DNA of 63,641 nt, filler included, from Octopus bimaculoides (taxonomy: Eukaryota): NCBI RefSeq assembly GCF_001194135.2. It is 4 parts of 4 records of this genome, joined end to end, with 100 filler letters (N's around TTAATTAATTAA, not from the genome) between each part and the next. Parts side by side here need not be neighbours in the genome. Positions count along the whole stretch, not along the records: positions 42,900 to 60,664 come from NC_068996.1; 3 more parts are not named here. One strand, given 5' to 3'. Of this stretch, positions 51,953-60,664 are shown one piece after another; positions within the stretch are counted from its first letter, which is position 1; every line of letters starts with the position of its first letter. The notes under the pieces were generated by a model, which worked only from the letters and a program-made list of their open reading frames with translations, had not been told where the DNA came from and ran no database searches. Made by a program: the position numbers and the translations under genes.

Positions 51953-52123
51953 TAGCAAAGAGGTAGCTCGAATTTGTACTTGAATCAAACGCCGCCGCGG
52001 ATACATAAGGTGGGGTATTATCAAATAGGTCCCGTATATTAAGAGGCCCTGATTTGAGTGACCCCAACTGGTCTAATTTAAATGCCTGGTTGTTGCTAAA
52101 TGCGAGGTAACCCTCCGTGTAAT
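51953..52123 (-). CDS. Mucin-hemopexin gene exon: (Y)YTEGYLAFSNNQAFKLDQLGSLKSGPLNIRDLFDNTPPYVSAAAFDSSTNSSYLFA
   Basis: CTTTCATTTTTTTCCAG acceptor, GTAAGT donor, 171 nt, phase 1 to 1. LF..TP..VSAAAFD....SYLF fits the hemopexin P..IDAA.......YFF pattern. Confidence 0.85.
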
Positions 52124-52174
52124 CTGGAAAAAAATGAAAGCAATATTCGTTAATATCATCATCGTCACCGTTTA

Positions 52175-52306
52175 GTTAGGTAGTTAGGTAGGTAGGTAGG
52201 TAGGTAGATATAGAGATGGATAGATAGATAGATAGATGGATGGATAGGTAGGTAGGTAGGTAGGTAGGTAGGTAGGTAGGTAGATAGATAGATAGATATA
52301 GAGATG

Positions 52307-52356
<50 letters not shown>

Positions 52357-52363
52357 CACAGAC

Positions 52364-52413
<50 letters not shown>

Positions 52414-52442
52414 GTAGGTAGATAGCGATAGATAGATAGATC

Positions 52443-52496
<54 letters not shown>

Positions 52497-52502
52497 CAGA
52501 CA
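52175..52502. repeat. Compound (TAGG)n/(TAGA)n tetranucleotide microsatellite
   Basis: Directly visible. Confidence 0.95.
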
Positions 52503-52701
52503 GATTCGCCTTTTCTATTTCCTCTCTCTGCTTATTTCTGCATTCCCTTCCGACTAAGAGCGTAGGCTCGCAACATAAAAAGCCTTCGTCTTGTCCCTTC
52601 GTAAATTCTCACTTAAGAAATTACCCACAATACAGACACCCCCCCTAAAAAAAACATTTTGTCCCCGAGATCTACCACAATCTTAAGACCATCGTTATTC
52701 A

Positions 52702-53738
52702 TTTAGGGTCAGGCTTAGGGTTTTAGAGTCAGGGATAGGTTTTGGAGTTAGGGTTAGGGTTTTAGAGTCAGTGAATGGGTTTTATCATTAAGGATAATGT
52801 TTTAGAGATAGGGTTAGGTTCGGGTTTTAGCGTTAGGGATAGGGTTTTAGAGTTAGGGTTAGGGTTCTGGTTTTATAGTTAGGGTTTTAGGGTCAGGCTT
52901 AGGGATAGGGTTTTAGGGTTAGGGATAGGATAGTAGAGTTCGGGTTCGGATTTTAGAGTTAGGGTTAGGGTTTTATAGTTAAGGTGTTAGGGTCAGGCTT
53001 AAGGATAGGGTTTTAGGGTTAGGGATAGGGTTTTAGAGTTAGGGTTAGGGTTTTATAGTTAAGGTTTTAGGGTCAGGCTTAAGGATAGGGTTTTGGGGTT
53101 AGGGATAGGGTTTTAGAGTTAGGCATAGGGTTTTAGAGTTAGGGTTCGGGTTTTATAGTTAGGGATTTAGGGTCAGGCTTAGGGATAGGGTTTTAGGGTT
53201 AGGGATAGGGTTTTAGGGTTAAGGATAGGGTTTTAGAGTTAGGGTTAGGGTTCGGATTTGAGGGTTAGGGATTTAGGGTCAGGGTTATTGTTTTAAGGTT
53301 ATGGATAAGATTTTAGAGTTAGAGTTAGTGTATTAGGGCCAGGATTAGGTTCGGGTTTTTGGGTTAGGGTTTTAGAGTTAGGATTAGGTTCGGGTTTTAG
53401 AGGTAGGGTTTTAGGGTCAGGCTTAGGGATAGGGTTTGAGTGATAGGGATAGGGTTTTAGAGTTAGGGTCAGGGTTCGGGTTTTAGGGATAGGGTTTTAG
53501 AGTTAGAGTTAGGGTTTTAGGGTCAGAGTTAGGATTTTAGAGTTAGTTAAGGGTTTTAGGGCCAGGATTAGGTTCGGGTTTTAGGGTTAGGGTTAGGGTT
53601 AGGTTTAGGGCTAGGGTTAGGTTTAGGGTTTAGGGTTAGGTTTAGGGTTAGGGTTAGGGTTAGGTTTAGGGCTAGTGCTAGGGTTCGGGTTAGGGTTTAG
53701 GGTTAGGGTTAGGGCTAGGGTTAGGGTTGGGGTTAGGG
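52702..53738 (+). repeat. Interstitial telomeric array 3: variant TTAGGG/TTTTAGGG/GATAGG satellite grading into near-canonical TTAGGG
   Basis: GGTCAGGCTT recurs at 52707, 52891, 52991, 53071, 53171 and 53415 (80/100-bp spacing in the core); near-canonical hexamers from ~53580. Confidence 0.95.
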
Positions 53739-53802
53739 TCCGAGCCCTTACCAGCCCCCTATACCCGAAAAATGAAACATGATAAATTATCCATCAACCT
53801 AC

Positions 53803-54160
53803 ATTTCATCACTGCCGTATAAGCAAACGGACACTCGAAGTTCGGTATATTTGGTGGGGCCACAGTTGTAGTTGGTGCAGGGGTCGATGTTGTAGTTGTT
53901 CTTGTCGTTGTTGTCGTCGTCGTGGTAGAAGCTTGCGTTGAAAACAGAATTGTGGACAGCAAGGTTTCTTTCGTACTTGGTAACGTCGATGATAATGGTG
54001 ACGAGGGCGTTGGTGTTGATGTTGTTGGTGTGGTTGCTGGTGATGTTGTTGTTGGTGTTGATGTTGTTGGTGTGGTTGCTGGTGATGTTGTTGGTGTTGA
54101 TGTTGTTGGTGTGGTTGCTGGTGATGTTGTTGTTGGTGTTGATGTTGTTGGTGTGGTTGC
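53803..54160 (-). CDS. Mucin-hemopexin gene, Thr/Pro/Ser-rich exon (5' end lost in a gap): (ATTPTTSTPTT[T]SP)n...TTTVAPPNIPNFECPFAYTAVMK
   Basis: Open frame from the gap edge with 39/42-nt tandem coding repeats. The donor AAAT|GTAGGT at 53802 gives phase 1, matching the exon at 52123. Confidence 0.8.
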
Positions 54161-54488
54161 NNNNNNNNNNNNNNNNNNNNNNNNNNNNNNNNNNNNNNNN
54201 NNNNNNNNNNNNNNNNNNNNNNNNNNNNNNNNNNNNNNNNNNNNNNNNNNNNNNNNNNNNNNNNNNNNNNNNNNNNNNNNNNNNNNNNNNNNNNNNNNNN
54301 NNNNNNNNNNNNNNNNNNNNNNNNNNNNNNNNNNNNNNNNNNNNNNNNNNNNNNNNNNNNNNNNNNNNNNNNNNNNNNNNNNNNNNNNNNNNNNNNNNNN
54401 NNNNNNNNNNNNNNNNNNNNNNNNNNNNNNNNNNNNNNNNNNNNNNNNNNNNNNNNNNNNNNNNNNNNNNNNNNNNNNNNNNNNNNNN

Positions 54489-57400
54489 CCTAACCCTAAC
54501 CCTAACCCTAACCCTAAACCTAACCCTAACCCTAACCCTAACCCTAAAACCTAACTCTGATCCTCTGACCCTAAAACCCTGTCCCTAACCCTAAAACCCT
54601 ATCCTTAACCCTGAAACCCTAATCCTGACCCTAAAACGCTAACCCTAAAACCCGAACCCTAAAACCTGAACCCTAAAAACCGAACCCTAACCCAAACATT
54701 AAAACACAAACCCTAAAAATCGAACCCATACCCTAACTCTAAAACCCTATCCCTAACCCTAAAACCCTAACCCTGACCCTAAACCCTTAACCCTAAAACC
54801 TAAACCCTAAACATAACTCTAAAACCCTATCCCTAACCTTAAAACCCTTACCCTGACACTAAACACCTAATCCTAAAACCCGAACCCTAACCCTGACCCT
54901 AACCCTAACCTAACCCTAACCTTAACCCTAACCCTAACACTAACCCTAACCCTAACCCAAAGTACCGAAGGGCATATAACAGAATATACAAAAAAAAACA
55001 AGAACCCTAACACTAACCCTAACCCTAGCCCTAAACCTAACCCCAAGTACCGAAGGGCATATAACAGAATATACAAAAAACAAAAACCCTAACCCTAACC
55101 CTAACCCTAACCCTAAACCTAACCCTAACCCTAAAACACTAACCCTAACTCTAAAGCTCTATCGCTAACCCTGACCCTAACCCTAAGACTCAAACTCTAT
55201 CCCTAACTCTAAAACCCTGTCCCTAACCCTAAAACCCTATCCCTAACCCTAAAACCCTAATCCTGACTCTAAAACGCTAACCCTAAAACCCGAACCCTAA
55301 CCCAAACATTGAAACACAAACTCTAAAATTCAAACCCTTACCCTAACTCTAAAACCCTATCCCTAAGCATAAAACCCTAACCCTGACCCTAAAACCTTAA
55401 CCCTAAAACATAAACCCTAACCCTAACTCTAAAACCCTATCCCTAACCCTAAAACCCTTACCTGACCCTAAACACCAAACCCTAAAACCCGAACCCTAAC
55501 GCTGACCCTAACCCTAACCCTAAACCTAAACCTAACCCTAACACTAATCCTTACCCTAACTCTAGCCCCAAGTACCGAAGGGCATATAACAGAATATACA
55601 AAAAACAAAAACCCTAACCCTAAACCTAACCCTAACCCTAACCCTAGCCCTCACCCTAATCCCTAACCCTAACCCTTAACCCTAATAGCTAACTCTGATC
55701 CTAAAAACTAAACCTGACCCTAAAACCCTAACCCTAACCCAAACCCTAACCCTAACCCTAAATCTAACCCTAACCCTAACCCTATCACTAACTCTAAAAC
55801 CCTAACGCTGACTCTAAAATGCTAACCCTAACCCTAACCCTAAACCTAACCCTCCAATTTCTTCATTTTTCACATTTTTCTGTAACTCTAACCCTAATAC
55901 CTTAACCCTAAAACCTAACTCTAACTCTAAAGCCCTATCGCTAACCCTAATCCTAACCCTAAATCTCAAACCCTATCCCTAACTCTAAAACCCTATCCCT
56001 AACCCTGAAACCCTAACCCTGACCCTAAATCCCAACCCTAAAAACCAAACCTTAACCCTAACCTAAAACCCTATCCCTAACCCTAAAACCCTAATCCTGA
56101 CCCTAAAACCCGAACCCCAACCCTTACCTGACCCTAAACATCAAACCCTAAAACCCGAACCCTAACGCTGACCCTAACCCTAACCCTAAGCCAAAACCTA
56201 ACACTAACCCTAACCCTAACCCTAACCCTGACCCTAAATCCCAACCCTAAAAACCGAACCTTAACCCTAACTCTAAAACCCTATCCTTAACCCTAAAACC
56301 CTAATCCTGACCCTAAAACGAATTACCCTAAAACCCGAACCCCAACCCTTACCTGACCCTAAACACCAAACCCTAAAACCCGAACCCTAACGCTGACCCT
56401 AACCCTAACCCTAAACCAAAACCTAACCCTAACACTAATCCTGACCCTAAAACGAATAACCCTAAAACTCGAACCCTAACCGAAACATTAAATCACAAAC
56501 CCTAAAAATCGAACCCTTACCCTAACTCTAAAACCCTATCCCTATCCCTAAAACCCTAACCCTGATCCTAAAACCCGAACCCTAACCCCAAGTACCGAAG
56601 GGCATATAGCAGAATATACAAAAAAACCCTAACCCTAACCCTAACCCTAACCCTAACCCCAAGTACCGAATGGCATATAATAGAATATACAAAAAAACAA
56701 AAACATAACCCTAGCCCTAACCCCAAGTACCGAAGGGCATATAACAGAATATACAAAAGAACAAAAGCCCTAACCCAAACCCTAACCCTAACCCCAAGTA
56801 CCGAAGAGCATATAACAGAATATACAAAAAAATGCAAAAACCCTAACCCTAACCCTAACCCTAAAACCTAACTCTGATCATAAAACCCTCAACCTGACCC
56901 TAAAACCCCAACCCTAACTCTAAAGGCCTATCGCTAACCCTGACCCTAACCCTATCGCTAACTCTAAAACCCTGTCCCTAACCCTAGAACCCCATCCCTA
57001 ACCCTAAAACCCTAATCCTGACCCTAAAACGCTAACCCTAAAACCCGAACCCTAACCCAAACATTAAAACACAAACCCTAAATATCGAACCCTTACCCTG
57101 ACTCTAAAACCCTATCCCTAACCCTAAAAGCCTAACCCTGACCCTAAAACCTTAACCCTAAAACCTAAACCCTAACCCTAACTCTAAAACCCTATCACTA
57201 ACCCTAAAACCCTTACCCTGACCCTAAACACCAAACCCTAAAATCCGAACCCTAACCTTGACCCTAACCCTAACCCTAACCTTAACCCTAACCCTAACCC
57301 CAAGTACCGAAGGGCATATAACAGAATATACAAAAAAGCAAAAACCCTAACCCTAACCCTAACCTTAACCCTAACCCTAACCCCAAGTACCGAAGGGCAT

Positions 57401-58403
57401 ATAACAGAATATACAAAAAAACAAAAACCATAACCCTAAACCCAAGTACCGAAGGGCATATAACAGAATATACAAATAAACAAAAACCCTAACCCCAAGT
57501 ACCGAAGGGCATATAACAGAATATACAAAAGAAAGCAAAAACCCTAACCCTAACCCTAACCCTAACCCCAAGTACCGAAGGGCATATAACACAATATACA
57601 AAANNNNNNNNNNNNNNNNNNNNNNNNNNNNNNNNNNNNNNNNNNNNNNNNNNNNNNNNNNNNNNNNNNNNNNNNNNNNNNNNNNNNNNNNNNNNNNNNN
57701 NNNNNNNNNNNNNNNNNNNNNNNNNNNNNNNNNNNNNNNNNNNNNNNNNNNNNNNNNNNNNNNNNNNNNNNNNNNNNNNNNNNNNNNNNNNNNNNNNNNN
57801 NNNNNNNNNNNNNNNNNNNNNNNNNNNNNNNNNNNNNNNNNNNNNNNNNNNNNNNNNNNNNNNNNNNNNNNNNNNNNNNNNNNNNNNNNNNNNNNNNNNN
57901 NNNNNNNNNNNNNNNNNNNNNNNNNNNNNNNNNNNNNNNNNNNNNNNNNNNNNNNNNNNNNNNNNNNNNNNNNNNNNNNNNNNNNNNNNNNNNNNNNNNN
58001 NNNNNNNNNNNNNNNNNNNNNNNNNNNNNNNNNNNNNNNNNNNNNNNNNNNNNNNNNNNNNNNNNNNNNNNNNNNNNNNNNNNNNNNNNNNNNNNNNNNN
58101 NNNNNNNNNNNNNNNNNNNNNNNNNNNNNNNNNNNNNNNNNNNNNNNNNNNNNNNNNNNNNNNNNNNNNNNNNNNNNNNNNNNNNNNNNNNNNNNNNNNN
58201 NNNNNNNNNNNNNNNNNNNNNNNNNNNNNNNNNNNNNNNNNNNNNNNNNNNNNNNNNNNNNNNNNNNNNNNNNNNNNNNNNNNNNNNNNNNNNNNNNNNN
58301 NNNNNNNNNNNNCCCTAACCCTAAGACCCTAACTTTGACCCTAAATCCCTAACTCTAAAAACCGAACCCAAACCCTAATTCTAAAACCTATCCCTAACAC
58401 TAA

Positions 58404-58442
<39 letters not shown>

Positions 58443-58763
58443 CCTAACACTAAACCCTAACCCTAAAACCCTAAAACCCTAACCCTAAAACCCTAACCCT
58501 AAAACCGAACCCAAACCCTAATTCTAAAACCCTATCCCTAACACTAAAACCCTAACCCTATCCCTAAAACCCTAACCTTGACCCTAAATCCCTAACTCTA
58601 AAAACCGAACCCAAACCCTAATTCTAAAACCCTATCCCTAACCCTAAAACCCTAACCCTGACCCCAAAATCTTAACCCTAAAACCCGAACCCTAACTCTA
58701 ACTCTAAAACCCTATCTCTAACCCTAAAACCCTAACCCTAACCCAAACTCTGAAACCCTAACC

Positions 58764-58804
<41 letters not shown>

Positions 58805-58854
58805 CCCTAACACTAAACCCTAACCCTAAAACCCTAAAACCCTAACCCTAAAAC
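54489..58854 (-). repeat. Interstitial telomeric array 4: CCCTAA and variant (CCCTAAAA, CCCTAT, CCCTGA, CCCGAA) higher-order satellite, interrupted by the gap 57604-58312
   Basis: Directly visible; canonical at its left edge and variant further right; both ends run into N gaps. Confidence 0.95.
54959..57603 (+). repeat. 12 copies of a 30-nt cassette AAGTACCGAAGGGCATATAACAGAATATAC plus A-rich tail, embedded in CCCTAA repeats
   Basis: Copies start at ~54960, 55045, 55570, 56590, 56661, 56725, 56796, 57302, 57385, 57444, 57497 and 57570, each with 0-2 substitutions. Confidence 0.95.
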
Positions 58855-60664
58855 NNNNNNNNNNNNNNNNNNNNNNNNNNNNNNNNNNNNNNNNNNNNNN
58901 NNNNNNNNNNNNNNNNNNNNNNNNNNNNNNNNNNNNNNNNNNNNNNNNNNNNNNNNNNNNNNNNNNNNNNNNNNNNNNNNNNNNNNNNNNNNNNNNNNNN
59001 NNNNNNNNNNNNNNNNNNNNNNNNNNNNNNNNNNNNNNNNNNNNNNNNNNNNNNNNNNNNNNNNNNNNNNNNNNNNNNNNNNNNNNNNNNNNNNNNNNNN
59101 NNNNNNNNNNNNNNNNNNNNNNNNNNNNNNNNNNNNNNNNNNNNNNNNNNNNNNNNNNNNNNNNNNNNNNNNNNNNNNNNNNNNNNNNNNNNNNNNNNNN
59201 NNNNNNNNNNNNNNNNNNNNNNNNNNNNNNNNNNNNNNNNNNNNNNNNNNNNNNNNNNNNNNNNNNNNNNNNNNNNNNNNNNNNNNNNNNNNNNNNNNNN
59301 NNNNNNNNNNNNNNNNNNNNNNNNNNNNNNNNNNNNNNNNNNNNNNNNNNNNNNNNNNNNNNNNNNNNNNNNNNNNNNNNNNNNNNNNNNNNNNNNNNNN
59401 NNNNNNNNNNNNNNNNNNNNNNNNNNNNNNNNNNNNNNNNNNNNNNNNNNNNNNNNNNNNNNNNNNNNNNNNNNNNNNNNNNNNNNNNNNNNNNNNNNNN
59501 NNNNNNNNNNNNNNNNNNNNNNNNNNNNNNNNNNNNNNNNNNNNNNNNNNNNNNNNNNNNNNNNNNNNNNNNNNNNNNNNNNNNNNNNNNNNNNNNNNNN
59601 NNNNNNNNNNNNNNNNNNNNNNNNNNNNNNNNNNNNNNNNNNNNNNNNNNNNNNNNNNNNNNNNNNNNNNNNNNNNNNNNNNNNNNNNNNNNNNNNNNNN
59701 NNNNNNNNNNNNNNNNNNNNNNNNNNNNNNNNNNNNNNNNNNNNNNNNNNNNNNNNNNNNNNNNNNNNNNNNNNNNNNNNNNNNNNNNNNNNNNNNNNNN
59801 NNNNNNNNNNNNNNNNNNNNNNNTATATATATATATATTATCTCAGTTATTGAAACTTTCGATAATTTGAATACGTTAATGGTTACCAGAGTTAGCAAAA
59901 TTACACTAAAAAACAAGATATCCCAGCCGTTTTACAGGTTGATATACCGAGTTAAAGTGATACATTTTGAGAATATATGGATAATAACAACAAATGGAGC
60001 AAAATGCACGTCGATGAAAGTTATTTTAATTCCTACATATATGTTTCGAAGAATTATGACGGGGTCAACGGTATTATTCCACGGGCTTTAGGTATAAGAA
60101 CGCTAGTTTACATAGAAATATAAAGGGAGGGTGTTATTGATGTGAAGCTAAAGGTTGAGGTCAAGGAGTTATTTGGGTAAGGGGAGATAATTAAAGTCAA
60201 TGTTTACATATGTGTCTGCTAGGGTGCGGACACCTATGTACAAACACGTGCGTGTACGTACATACACACACACATATGCTTATGTGTACCTACGCAGTGG
60301 GACTGAACCCGGAACCATATGGTTGGTAAGCAAGCTACTTACCACACAGCCACTCCTACACCTATATATATATAGATATGCAGGGCAGTGAATCGTCAAT
60401 TAGTAATAAAATTAATAATTAACAATTTTGCCGGGTAGCTCAGTATGAAAAAACCTTTTCGGTAAAAAACATTTATAATCATAAATATACAGGGATTGAC
60501 AGTAACCTGCTTCTCCACCATACTGAGAATTCAGAAACAGCAGTCAAAGAACTACTGATTTCAAAACTACAAATTATTACTCTAGATTGATAGCGATATT
60601 TTTGATACACACAGAACAAAAAACAGTAGAGAAGAGTAAAAAAAAAACAAAAAAAAAACAACAA

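What the first reader, a model, noticed from the sequence alone, without database searches (positions are those of the whole stretch)
54959..57603. Constant 30-nt cassette repeatedly interleaved with variable numbers of telomeric repeats
Twelve copies of (CCC)C-AAGTACCGAAGGGCATATAACAGAATATAC-A4-9-(C/G)-A-rich-CCCTAA occur, all in one orientation and one register. Within clusters they are separated by about 1 to 7 hexamers (e.g. 57302, 57385, 57444, 57497, 57570). The cassette is much better conserved than the surrounding variant repeats. Hypothesis A (inference): it is the extreme 3' end of a telomere-targeting non-LTR element or SINE, in the orientation of TRAS-type elements (A-rich tail followed by the C-strand repeat). 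Hypothesis B (inference): it records a reverse transcriptase copying past a template boundary. On the G strand each unit reads TTAGGGTT-TTTGTTTTTTGTATATTCTGTTATATGCCCTTCGGTACTT-GGGGTTAGGG, the product expected if an RNA 5'-..AAGUACCGAAGGGCAUAUAACAGAAUAUACAAAAAACAAAAACCCUAAC..-3' (telomerase RNA or a Penelope/terminon-like RNA) were copied beyond its CCCUAA template and then re-extended. The usually conserved internal C in the tail argues for a templated tail over untemplated poly(A). Hypothesis C: ordinary unequal crossover of a telomere-associated minisatellite with hexamer slippage.
Basis: partly seen in the sequence, partly recalled or inferred. Interest (0 to 1): 0.85.

Follow-up and report, generated by a model that had tools for sequence, protein, structure and literature searches.

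The report
Short insert amplified inside telomere-like satellite
A 30-base non-telomeric sequence with an A-rich tail really does recur 12 times among telomere-type repeats, but the copies were multiplied by ordinary DNA duplication of one old insertion, so nothing here shows an active telomere-targeting element or telomerase copying errors.

Summary
There are 12 same-strand copies of AAGTACCGAAGGGCATATAACAGAATATAC (0-2 mismatches) at 54960-57599, and none are expected by chance. Each carries an A-rich tail and is separated from the next by (CCCTAA)n+CCCC.

The copies are not independent events. They sit at the same place in a roughly 600-1000 bp higher-order repeat of a degenerate telomere-derived satellite. 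They also share variant hexamers in their flanks:
- A 64-nt stretch holding a CCTTAA variant is 100% identical before c8 and c9.
- c2 and c3 match at 90% over 132 nt.
- The four-cassette cluster c4-c7 aligns collinearly with c8-c11, including shared tail variants.

The cassette varies about 2-3 times less than the neighbouring hexamers. That is a modest difference, not a striking one.

The single ancestral insert looks like a reverse-transcript primed on the G strand, because its A-rich tail abuts CCCTAA in the TRAS-type orientation. Its source RNA is unknown:
- No copy extends further 5'.
- There is no RT ORF, tRNA or Rfam match.
- No copy was found elsewhere in the searchable collections, which do not hold this genome.

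Telomerase-RNA read-through cannot be tested, because no cephalopod telomerase RNA is known. The cassette also lacks the template-proximal hairpin found in mollusc telomerase RNAs. Interest is low to moderate.

The parts
54489..57603 (+). C-strand (CCCTAA-type) degenerate telomere-derived satellite with a higher-order repeat. It is bounded by N gaps at 54161-54488 and 57604-58312. It holds all 12 cassettes.
   Evidence: periods 6 and 20; anchors A/B/C; D1-D5.
54489..55149 (+). Higher-order unit U0. Its 5' part is lost in the gap. Anchors B 54691 and C 54857; cassettes c1 and c2.
55150..55925 (+). Higher-order unit U1. Anchors A 55150, B 55301, C 55466; one cassette, c3. It also holds the unrelated filler at 55855-55890.
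55926..56918 (+). Higher-order unit U2, rearranged. Anchor A 55926; two cassette-less sub-units that are 95% alike (56100-56225 and 56325-56450); anchor B 56480; cassettes c4-c7.
   Evidence: D5.
56919..57603 (+). Higher-order unit U3. Anchors A 56919, B 57056, C 57222; cassettes c8-c12. It is cut by the gap.
   Evidence: 56942-57241 is 90% identical without gaps to 55187-55486 (D1).
54960..55004 (+). c1: cassette (0 mismatches) plus tail AAAAAAAAACAAGAA.
55045..55086 (+). c2: cassette (0 mismatches) plus tail AAAAAACAAAAA.
55570..55611 (+). c3: cassette (0 mismatches) plus tail AAAAAACAAAAA. It is the orthologue of c2.
   Evidence: D4: 55003-55134 vs 55528-55659, 90%.
56590..56626 (+). c4: cassette (1 mismatch) plus tail AAAAAAA.
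56661..56703 (+). c5: cassette (2 mismatches) plus tail AAAAAAACAAAAA, followed by the variant hexamer CATAA.
56725..56766 (+). c6: cassette (0 mismatches) plus tail AAAAGAACAAAA(G).
56796..56840 (+). c7: cassette (1 mismatch) plus tail AAAAAAATGCAAAAA.
57302..57344 (+). c8: cassette (0 mismatches) plus tail AAAAAAGCAAAAA.
57385..57427 (+). c9: cassette (0 mismatches) plus tail AAAAAAACAAAAA, followed by the variant hexamer CCATAA. It is the orthologue of c5.
57444..57486 (+). c10: cassette (0 mismatches) plus tail AAATAAACAAAAA.
57497..57541 (+). c11: cassette (0 mismatches) plus tail AAAAGAAAGCAAAAA. It shares the GC in the tail with c7.
57570..57603 (+). c12: cassette (1 mismatch) plus the first 4 tail bases, cut by the N gap.
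57261..57439 (+). Local tandem duplication with period 83 bp, 2.2 copies, 97% matches. Each copy carries the private CCTTAA variant, so c8 and c9 are DNA duplicates.
   Evidence: (D6: 57272-57335 = 57355-57418, 100% over 64 nt).
54918..55125 (+). Local tandem duplication with period 85 bp, 2.5 copies, 90% matches. Each copy carries the CACTAA variant (c1/c2).
58313..58854 (+). Continuation of the C-strand degenerate array after the gap. It has a different higher-order pattern and no cassette.

Best explanation
The array is a telomere-derived satellite, either an interstitial or subtelomeric telomere-like tract. It has a 20-bp degenerate sub-repeat and a higher-order unit of about 600-1000 bp.

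One short insert entered a pure CCCTAA stretch of the ancestral unit once. It was about 42-45 bp: a 30-nt unique core plus an A-rich tail of roughly A6-C-A5.

The insert was then multiplied passively by DNA-level processes at two scales:
- Local tandem duplication or unequal exchange of 53-85 bp units (cassette, tail and a few hexamers). Hexamer slippage changed spacer lengths in steps of 6.
- Duplication of whole higher-order units, including a block of four cassettes.

The original insert was most likely a reverse-transcript primed by a G-strand ...GGGTT-3' end annealed to an A-rich RNA 3' end. That end could have come from a nick or from a chromosome terminus. A 5'-truncated retroposon or mRNA 3' end is the likeliest template. 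The cDNA end was then rejoined to, or extended by, telomeric repeats.

Shown: the copies, the higher-order repeat, and the duplication relationships. Inferred: the single origin, the reverse-transcription origin of the founder, and present inactivity.

My confidence in DNA-level amplification is about 0.75. My confidence that the founder was a reverse-transcript is about 0.5.
For: Cassette clusters lie about 380-440 bp after anchor A, or 80-105 bp after anchor C, in each higher-order unit.

The flanks of the first cassette in U0, U1 and U3 share the variants CCTTAA and CACTAA.

c8 and c9 lie in an 83-bp tandem duplication with 97% matches. Their upstream 64 nt, including CCTTAA, are 100% identical (D6).

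c1 and c2 lie in an 85-bp duplication that carries CACTAA in both copies.

c2 and c3 align without gaps at 90% over 132 nt, flanks included (D4).

The U2 cluster c4-c7 aligns collinearly with the U3 cluster c8-c11. c5 and c9 share the variant first hexamer C(C)ATAA. c7 and c11 share the GC in the tail. The same four perfect hexamers follow c7 and c11.

All 12 copies start at the same base, after CCCC.

Spacers are (CCCTAA)n+CCCC.

There is no copy elsewhere in the piece.

The tail|CCCTAA junction and the orientation equal the TRAS1 TT^AGG(G) nick geometry.
Against: The cassette is somewhat better conserved than expected if it simply shared the age of the higher-order units. None of 36 consecutive columns varies among U0, U1 and U3, whose flanks differ by 6-10%. 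The longest invariant run in the flanks is about 21 columns. c2 and c3 are identical over 42 nt.

That pattern could mean the cassettes are younger than the units, through re-insertion or gene conversion, or that they are constrained. A higher mutation or slippage rate in hexamer and A runs is an alternative I cannot quantify.

The genome outside this 17.7-kb piece could not be searched, so 'single origin' applies to this locus only.

The scaffold is a gap-ridden assembly, and copy numbers in such arrays may be wrong.
Confidence: 0.6

Rival explanations
1. Repeated insertion by a telomere-repeat-specific retroposon. The cassette plus tail is the 3' end, or the whole, of a short non-autonomous element. 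A TRAS-like or endonuclease-independent reverse transcriptase mobilises it into CCCTAA tracts many times, and DNA duplication acts on top of that.
For: The A-rich tail abuts CCCTAA in the TRAS1 orientation and register. Tails vary in length and sequence far more than the core, as retroposon tails do. The cassettes are more uniform than the higher-order flanks. They occur only in the pure-hexamer parts of the units.
Against: All 12 copies share one 5' end, with no variable truncation and no longer copy. There is no RT ORF near the array; the only LINE fragment lies about 10 kb away and is unrelated. There is no tRNA-like or Rfam feature. Private hexamer variants are shared on both sides of different cassettes, and a 4-cassette block is duplicated collinearly, which shows DNA copying rather than fresh insertion. 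Pure tracts in the other arrays of the piece (49103-49582, 49874-50849, 58313-58854) hold no cassette.
Confidence: 0.12
2. Telomerase-RNA read-through. The 42-nt core plus tail is the 5' leader of the species' telomerase RNA. It was copied past the template boundary to the RNA 5' end at a chromosome end or a break. This happened either once, like a type-B TERC-ITS, or repeatedly. Telomerase then re-extended the product.
For: The orientation is exactly what read-through predicts: on the C strand, leader then CCCTAA. Four vertebrate TERC-ITS loci have this organisation (PMC8537989). The constant 5' end would be RNA run-off. The leader length of about 42 nt is in the range of mollusc telomerase RNAs, whose template starts near nt 33 in Pomacea. 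No cephalopod telomerase RNA has been described, so nothing contradicts it directly.
Against: Mollusc and other non-vertebrate telomerase RNAs have a P1.1 hairpin right next to the template (PMC8480181). The putative leader has a 12-14-nt unstructured A-rich stretch there and no stable fold (MFE -2.7 kcal/mol, z=0.06). There is no Rfam telomerase hit. The tails differ in 9 of 11 copies although a templated tail should be constant. The multiplicity is already explained by DNA duplication. Events of this kind are rare in vertebrates: 41 loci in 30 genomes, of which 4 are type B.
Confidence: 0.07
3. A constrained or conversion-homogenised element. The cassette is kept uniform because it has a function, such as a protein-binding site or a small-RNA source in subtelomeric chromatin. 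Alternatively, recombination starts preferentially in the only long perfectly identical stretches.
For: The cassette has the longest invariant run of the higher-order alignment, 36 columns against about 21. Its one CpG is intact in all 12 copies.
Against: The effect is modest (Fisher p=0.03; 4/120 differences between U2 and U3). The RNA has no structure on either strand. No homologue was found anywhere that could be searched. Higher-order units without a cassette exist.
Confidence: 0.08
4. Assembly artefact. The number and order of cassettes are products of short-read assembly of a collapsed repeat, or the cassette is a foreign or adapter sequence.
For: The scaffold has N gaps on both sides of the array and through the piece. 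The last copy is cut by a gap.
Against: The copies carry distinct substitutions, tails and flanks that form a coherent genealogy. The 30-mer has no true match in viral, bacterial or metagenome contigs; the three 20-mer hits are chance.
Confidence: 0.05

Closest known systems
Higher-order subtelomeric or interstitial telomere-derived satellites that amplify embedded non-telomeric pieces by unequal exchange. Examples from my own knowledge, not tested here: yeast Y' elements separated by internal TG1-3 tracts, and the human ALT line with SV40 sequence interleaved with TTAGGG.
   Same: A non-telomeric unit is interleaved with short telomeric tracts, all in one orientation. It is multiplied by recombination or duplication, and the number of telomeric repeats between units varies. 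Higher-order periodicity is present.
   Different: The unit here is tiny, about 45 bp, and non-coding. The host array is degenerate and is not shown to be at a chromosome end.
TERC-ITS loci, type B (Nergadze 2007, PMC2246262; Sola 2021, PMC8537989)
   Same: A non-telomeric fragment lies directly downstream of TTAGGG repeats on the G strand, in the orientation expected from copying past the template's 5' boundary.
   Different: In vertebrates the fragment is demonstrably telomerase-RNA sequence, it is single-copy, and it is inserted at a break in unique DNA with an empty orthologous site. Here the source RNA is unknown, the insert lies within a telomere-like array, and it is amplified 12 times.
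TRAS-type telomere-repeat-specific non-LTR retrotransposons of Bombyx (PMC7265360)
   Same: The sense strand of the insert equals the C strand. An A-rich tail joins the repeat at the position of the TT^AGG nick.
   Different: TRAS elements are kilobases long, encode EN and RT, and show variable 5' ends and independent insertions. None of this is seen here.
Endonuclease-independent LINE-1 insertion at dysfunctional telomeres (Morrish 2007, as summarised in PMC4700185)
   Same: An RNA with an A tail is reverse-transcribed from a telomeric 3' end. This would give exactly the geometry of telomeric repeat, truncated cDNA, A-tail and C-strand repeat.
   Different: That system was shown experimentally in mutant mammalian cells. 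Here it is only a plausible origin for a single founder event.

Membership tests
Tandem / higher-order satellite amplified at the DNA level | Recurrent long-period unit with recognisable anchors | tested here: met
   Anchors A, B and C recur with about 570-1000 bp spacing. 300 nt at 55187-55486 are 90% identical without gaps to 56942-57241 (D1). Units differ by 6.4-10.3% in substitutions.
Tandem / higher-order satellite amplified at the DNA level | Copies of the insert share private variants in their flanks, so flanks and insert were copied together | tested here: met
   CCTTAA lies upstream of both c8 and c9 within 64 identical nt (D6). CACTAA is shared by c1, c2 and c3 (D4). C(C)ATAA follows c5 and c9, and GC occurs in the tails of c7 and c11.
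Tandem / higher-order satellite amplified at the DNA level | Collinear duplication of multi-copy blocks | tested here: met
   c4-c7 aligns with c8-c11 unit by unit at 88% mean column identity. The differences are mostly 6-nt-multiple or tail indels.
Telomere-specific non-LTR retrotransposon (TRAS/SART type) or its SINE | A-rich 3' tail joined to the telomeric repeat at a fixed nick position and in one orientation | tested here: met
   All 11 complete tails join CCCTAA (or a 1-nt variant of it) on the C strand. This matches the TRAS1 TT^AGG nick.
Telomere-specific non-LTR retrotransposon (TRAS/SART type) or its SINE | Variable 5' truncation, and longer copies reaching an RT/EN ORF | tested here: not met
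   All 12 copies start at the same base after telomeric CCCC/CCCA/ACCC. There is no ORF with RT near the array. This applies to this 17.7-kb piece only.
Telomere-specific non-LTR retrotransposon (TRAS/SART type) or its SINE | Independent insertion events, with unrelated flanks | tested here: not met
   The flanks are paralogous wherever they can be read.
Telomere-specific non-LTR retrotransposon (TRAS/SART type) or its SINE | Copies elsewhere in the genome; transcription | not testable with these tools
   The source genome is not in any searchable collection. The 28-mer has 0 hits in metagenome contigs. The 20-mer gives only chance hits. No protein-database hit exists for ORFs across the cassettes.
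SINE (tRNA-derived) | tRNA-like head or pol III boxes | tested here: not met
   ARAGORN finds nothing in the piece. There is no Rfam hit in 54489-57603. The unit is only 30 nt plus a tail.
TERC-ITS / telomerase-RNA read-through product | Insert identical to the telomerase-RNA sequence immediately 5' of the template | not testable with these tools
   No cephalopod telomerase RNA is described. The 21 mollusc telomerase RNAs are from gastropods, bivalves and an aplacophoran (PMC8480181 supplement). No later paper was found.
TERC-ITS / telomerase-RNA read-through product | Orientation: leader then C-strand repeat (G strand: repeat then complement of leader) | tested here: met
   organisation B of PMC8537989.
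TERC-ITS / telomerase-RNA read-through product | Leader compatible with mollusc telomerase-RNA architecture (template-proximal P1.1 hairpin) | tested here: not met
   No stable hairpin is predicted. MFE is -2.7 kcal/mol with z=0.06, and 12-14 unstructured A-rich nt lie next to CCCUAA. This is weak evidence, because the cephalopod telomerase RNA could differ.
Penelope-like / terminon 3' end | Hammerhead-ribozyme-bearing pLTR or RT ORF next to the telomeric repeats | tested here: not met
   No Rfam match of any kind falls in the array at E<=1. There is no RT ORF.

The most novel reading that the evidence does not exclude
The core plus tail (5'-AAGUACCGAAGGGCAUAUAACAGAAUAUACAAAAAACAAAAA-3') is the 5' leader of the still-unidentified cephalopod telomerase RNA. 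It was copied past the template boundary to the RNA's 5' end at a former chromosome end. It would then be an invertebrate, intra-telomeric counterpart of the vertebrate type-B TERC-ITS. It would also be a ready-made probe for finding that telomerase RNA gene.
Probability: 0.07. Interest if true: 0.75.

Novelty: new member of a known kind. Interest (0 to 1): 0.27.

Why it matters
As it stands, this is an example of how telomere-derived satellites capture a small foreign piece and multiply it. That helps as a marker for assembling and tracing subtelomeric repeats in this genome, but it is not a new mechanism.

It would matter more if the 30-mer turned out to come from the species' telomerase RNA or from a telomere-targeting retroelement. 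Telomerase RNA has not been found in cephalopods. Natural fossils of template-boundary bypass inside telomeric arrays are not known outside the vertebrate TERC-ITS loci. A single string search of the full genome and transcriptome would settle this.

Tried and rejected
1. Looking for the cassette elsewhere:
- The 28-mer has 0 hits in metagenome contigs.
- The 20-mer has 2 metagenome hits, 1 bacterial hit and 0 viral hits. None extends beyond the 20 bases and all sit in unrelated contexts, so they are chance matches.
- The G-strand ORF that spans cassettes in all three frames was used as a protein query to reach other assemblies. 675 candidates shared short words with it, and none was significant.
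- A full-text search of papers for four sub-strings gave 0 papers.

2. Source within the piece. The best partial match is GTATATTGTGTTATA at 43453 (-), which is within the range of shuffled controls.

3. RNA families. There is no hit in the array. The many 'miRNA' hits are microsatellite artefacts below the gathering score. No tRNA was found. No fold is better than shuffles on either strand.

4. Identifying the organism through the LINE endonuclease ORF. The homologues are unnamed metagenome or coral proteins with PF03372, so the species is not established. The SINE-like repeats look cephalopod to me, from memory only.

5. Treating the cassette-less units 56100-56225 and 56325-56450 as empty sites. 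I rejected this because they also lack the downstream part of the unit, so they are recombination or deletion variants and not pre-insertion alleles.

6. A gradient of cassette decay along the array, as expected for serial terminal addition. None is seen; the mismatches are in c4, c5, c7 and c12.
Full report
**Observation**

The 30-mer AAGTACCGAAGGGCATATAACAGAATATAC occurs 12 times between 54960 and 57599. All copies are on the + strand, with 0-2 mismatches, and dinucleotide-preserving shuffles give none. The twelfth copy is cut after four tail bases by the N gap 57604-58312.

Each copy is preceded by telomeric sequence ending CCCC (10 of 12), CCCA or ACCC. Each is followed by an A-rich tail of 7-15 nt; most tails are close to A6-7-C-A5, and several have G or T interruptions. 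The C-strand repeat CCCTAA then follows.

Inside clusters the spacers are (CCCTAA)n+CCCC and measure 10-40 nt. No extra or degenerate copy exists on either strand of the piece 42900-60664.

**Setting**

The piece is a gap-ridden scaffold rich in microsatellites and interspersed repeats. It has several degenerate telomere-like arrays in both orientations:
- G-type at 49103-49582 and 52690-53750.
- C-type at 49874-50849 and 54489-58854.

So this is an interstitial or subtelomeric telomere-like region, not a simple terminal tract.

The array holding the cassettes has a 20-bp degenerate sub-period, CCCTAACCCTAAAACCCTAA. On top of that it has a higher-order unit that I traced with three anchors:
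- A at 55150, 55926 and 56919.
- B at 54691, 55301, 56480 and 57056.
- C at 54857, 55466, 56132, 56357 and 57222.

Units U0, U1 and U3 align over about 400 nt and differ by 6.4-10.3% in substitutions. 55187-55486 matches 56942-57241 at 90% without gaps.

**The copies are DNA duplicates**

The four cassette clusters (c1-c2, c3, c4-c7, c8-c12) lie at the same place in the four units, 80-105 bp after anchor C in U0, U1 and U3. Different cassettes share private hexamer variants in their flanks:
- c8 and c9 are each preceded by the same 34 bases, which contain a CCTTAA variant. That 34-base flank and the first 30 nt of each copy form 64-nt stretches that are 100% identical, inside an 83-bp tandem repeat with 97% matches (D6).
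- c1 and c2 lie in an 85-bp repeat that carries CACTAA in both copies.
- c2 (in U0) and c3 (in U1) match at 90% over 132 ungapped nt, flanks included. They share CACTAA and C(C/T)CTAG upstream (D4).
- The whole cluster c4-c7 aligns unit by unit with c8-c11. c5 and c9 both have the tail A7CA5 followed by the odd first hexamer C(C)ATAA. c7 and c11 both have GC in the tail and four perfect hexamers after it.

These are marks of copying at the DNA level, by unequal exchange or replication slippage for the 53-85-bp units and by higher-order unit duplication for whole clusters. They are not marks of fresh RNA-mediated insertions.

**How well conserved is the cassette?**

Among U0, U1 and U3 the cassette and the first six tail bases form a run of 36 invariant columns. 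The longest invariant run in about 410 flank columns is about 21, and no 30-column flank window is invariant.

Within clusters, the cassettes show 5 differences in 360 nt. The spacers show 10 departures from the perfect repeat in 218 nt, Fisher p=0.03. Between the orthologous clusters U2 and U3, the cassettes differ at 4 of 120 positions.

So the core varies roughly 2-3 times less than the hexamers around it, and much less than the A-rich tail. This is real but modest. A higher mutation and slippage rate of G/C-triplet hexamers and A runs would explain it, and so would conversion that starts in the only long identical stretches. Neither was tested. I count it as mild evidence against a purely passive history, and it is what keeps the rival explanations alive.

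**Origin of the founder insert**

On the G strand each unit reads ...TTAGGG-TTTTTGTTTTTTG-[complement of core]-GGGG-TTAGGG. An A-rich RNA 3' end annealed to a ...GGGTT-3' end would prime exactly this product. The junction is the position at which TRAS1 endonuclease nicks the insect repeat, TT^AGG (PMC7265360). L1 can use uncapped telomeres as primers in mammalian cells (Morrish 2007, as summarised in PMC4700185).

I therefore think a single 5'-truncated reverse-transcript of some A-tailed RNA is the likeliest founder. I could not identify the RNA:
- No copy extends beyond the common 5' end.
- There is no RT ORF near the array. The only LINE fragment, an APE-type endonuclease ORF at 44886-45299, is about 10 kb away.
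- There is no tRNA-like or Rfam feature.
- There is no related sequence in the piece.

**Telomerase-RNA read-through**

The geometry fits, and there is a genuine precedent. [quoted passage not shown]

However, no cephalopod telomerase RNA is available. The 21 mollusc telomerase RNAs of Logeswaran et al. come from gastropods, bivalves and one aplacophoran (PMC8480181), and I found no later report. Those RNAs have a P1.1 hairpin directly next to the template as the boundary element. The putative leader here has 12-14 unstructured A-rich bases at that place, and its fold is no better than shuffles.

With the multiplicity explained otherwise, read-through is at most a possible source of the one founder event. 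I put it at about 7%.

**External searches**

The source genome is not in any collection I could query:
- The 28-mer gave nothing in metagenome contigs.
- A 20-mer gave three chance hits in unrelated prokaryote-like contexts.
- A protein-space search with the open G-strand frame across cassettes gave nothing.
- The literature holds none of four sub-strings.

They remain undone and are cheap for anyone with the assembly and reads.

**Verdict**

This is a real, non-random feature. There is no evidence for an active telomere-targeting element or for recurrent telomerase read-through.

It is a new member of a known kind, and interest is low to moderate. A small chance remains that the 30-mer points to the unknown cephalopod telomerase RNA.

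Noticed in passing
window 49103-50849 and 52690-58854: Telomere-like arrays occur twice in head-to-head order: a G-strand array followed by a C-strand array. They are separated by 291 bp (49583-49873) and by about 740 bp including a gap (53751-54488). This is the orientation of a telomere-telomere fusion or an inverted duplication. The scaffold gaps make the order uncertain.
   Followed up: no
window 55855-55890: A second, unrelated non-telomeric filler, CCAATTTCTTCATTTTTCACATTTTTCTGTAA, sits inside the same C-strand array. It is single-copy, and it is A-rich on the G strand, the opposite polarity to the cassette tail.
   Followed up: partly
window 56100-56225 and 56325-56450: Two 126-bp sub-units are 95% identical to each other and 86% identical to 55434-55559. 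They carry anchor C and the pure tract but no cassette. They look like recombination or deletion variants of the higher-order unit, not empty sites.
   Followed up: yes
window 44886-45299 (+) and 43799-44194 (-): These are truncated LINE remnants. The + ORF is an APE-type endonuclease N-terminus whose database homologues carry PF03372 (best 66% identity, unnamed ENA protein). The ORF itself is below Pfam thresholds.
   Followed up: partly
window 47576-47830 (+), 51650-51880 (-), 60280-60360 (-): These are copies of a SINE-like repeat (GGTGTAGGAGTGGCTGTGTGGTAAGTAGCTTGC...) ending in TA microsatellite. From memory it resembles the abundant octopus SINE, which suggests a cephalopod source. ARAGORN calls no tRNA in it.
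   Followed up: partly
window 49086-49108 and 49850-49880: Both inner arrays abut interspersed-repeat sequence abruptly: ...CGTCGTAATCGACGAAG|TTAGGG and ...GGAGCGAAAAAT|CTAACCC. This is as expected if the telomere-like tracts were inserted into, or truncated, older repeats.
   Followed up: no
window 54009-54160: A 42-bp minisatellite (GTTGGTGTTGATGTTGTTGGTGTGGTTGCTGGTGATGTTGTT) has 3.7 copies at 94% and is cut by the gap 54161-54488. It lies between the G-type and C-type arrays.
   Followed up: no
window 46950-47200 and 51090-51425: Dozens of Rfam 'microRNA' matches (mir-297, mir-3149, mir-466 and others) fall on TA/TG microsatellites. All are below gathering scores and are low-complexity artefacts.
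   Followed up: yes
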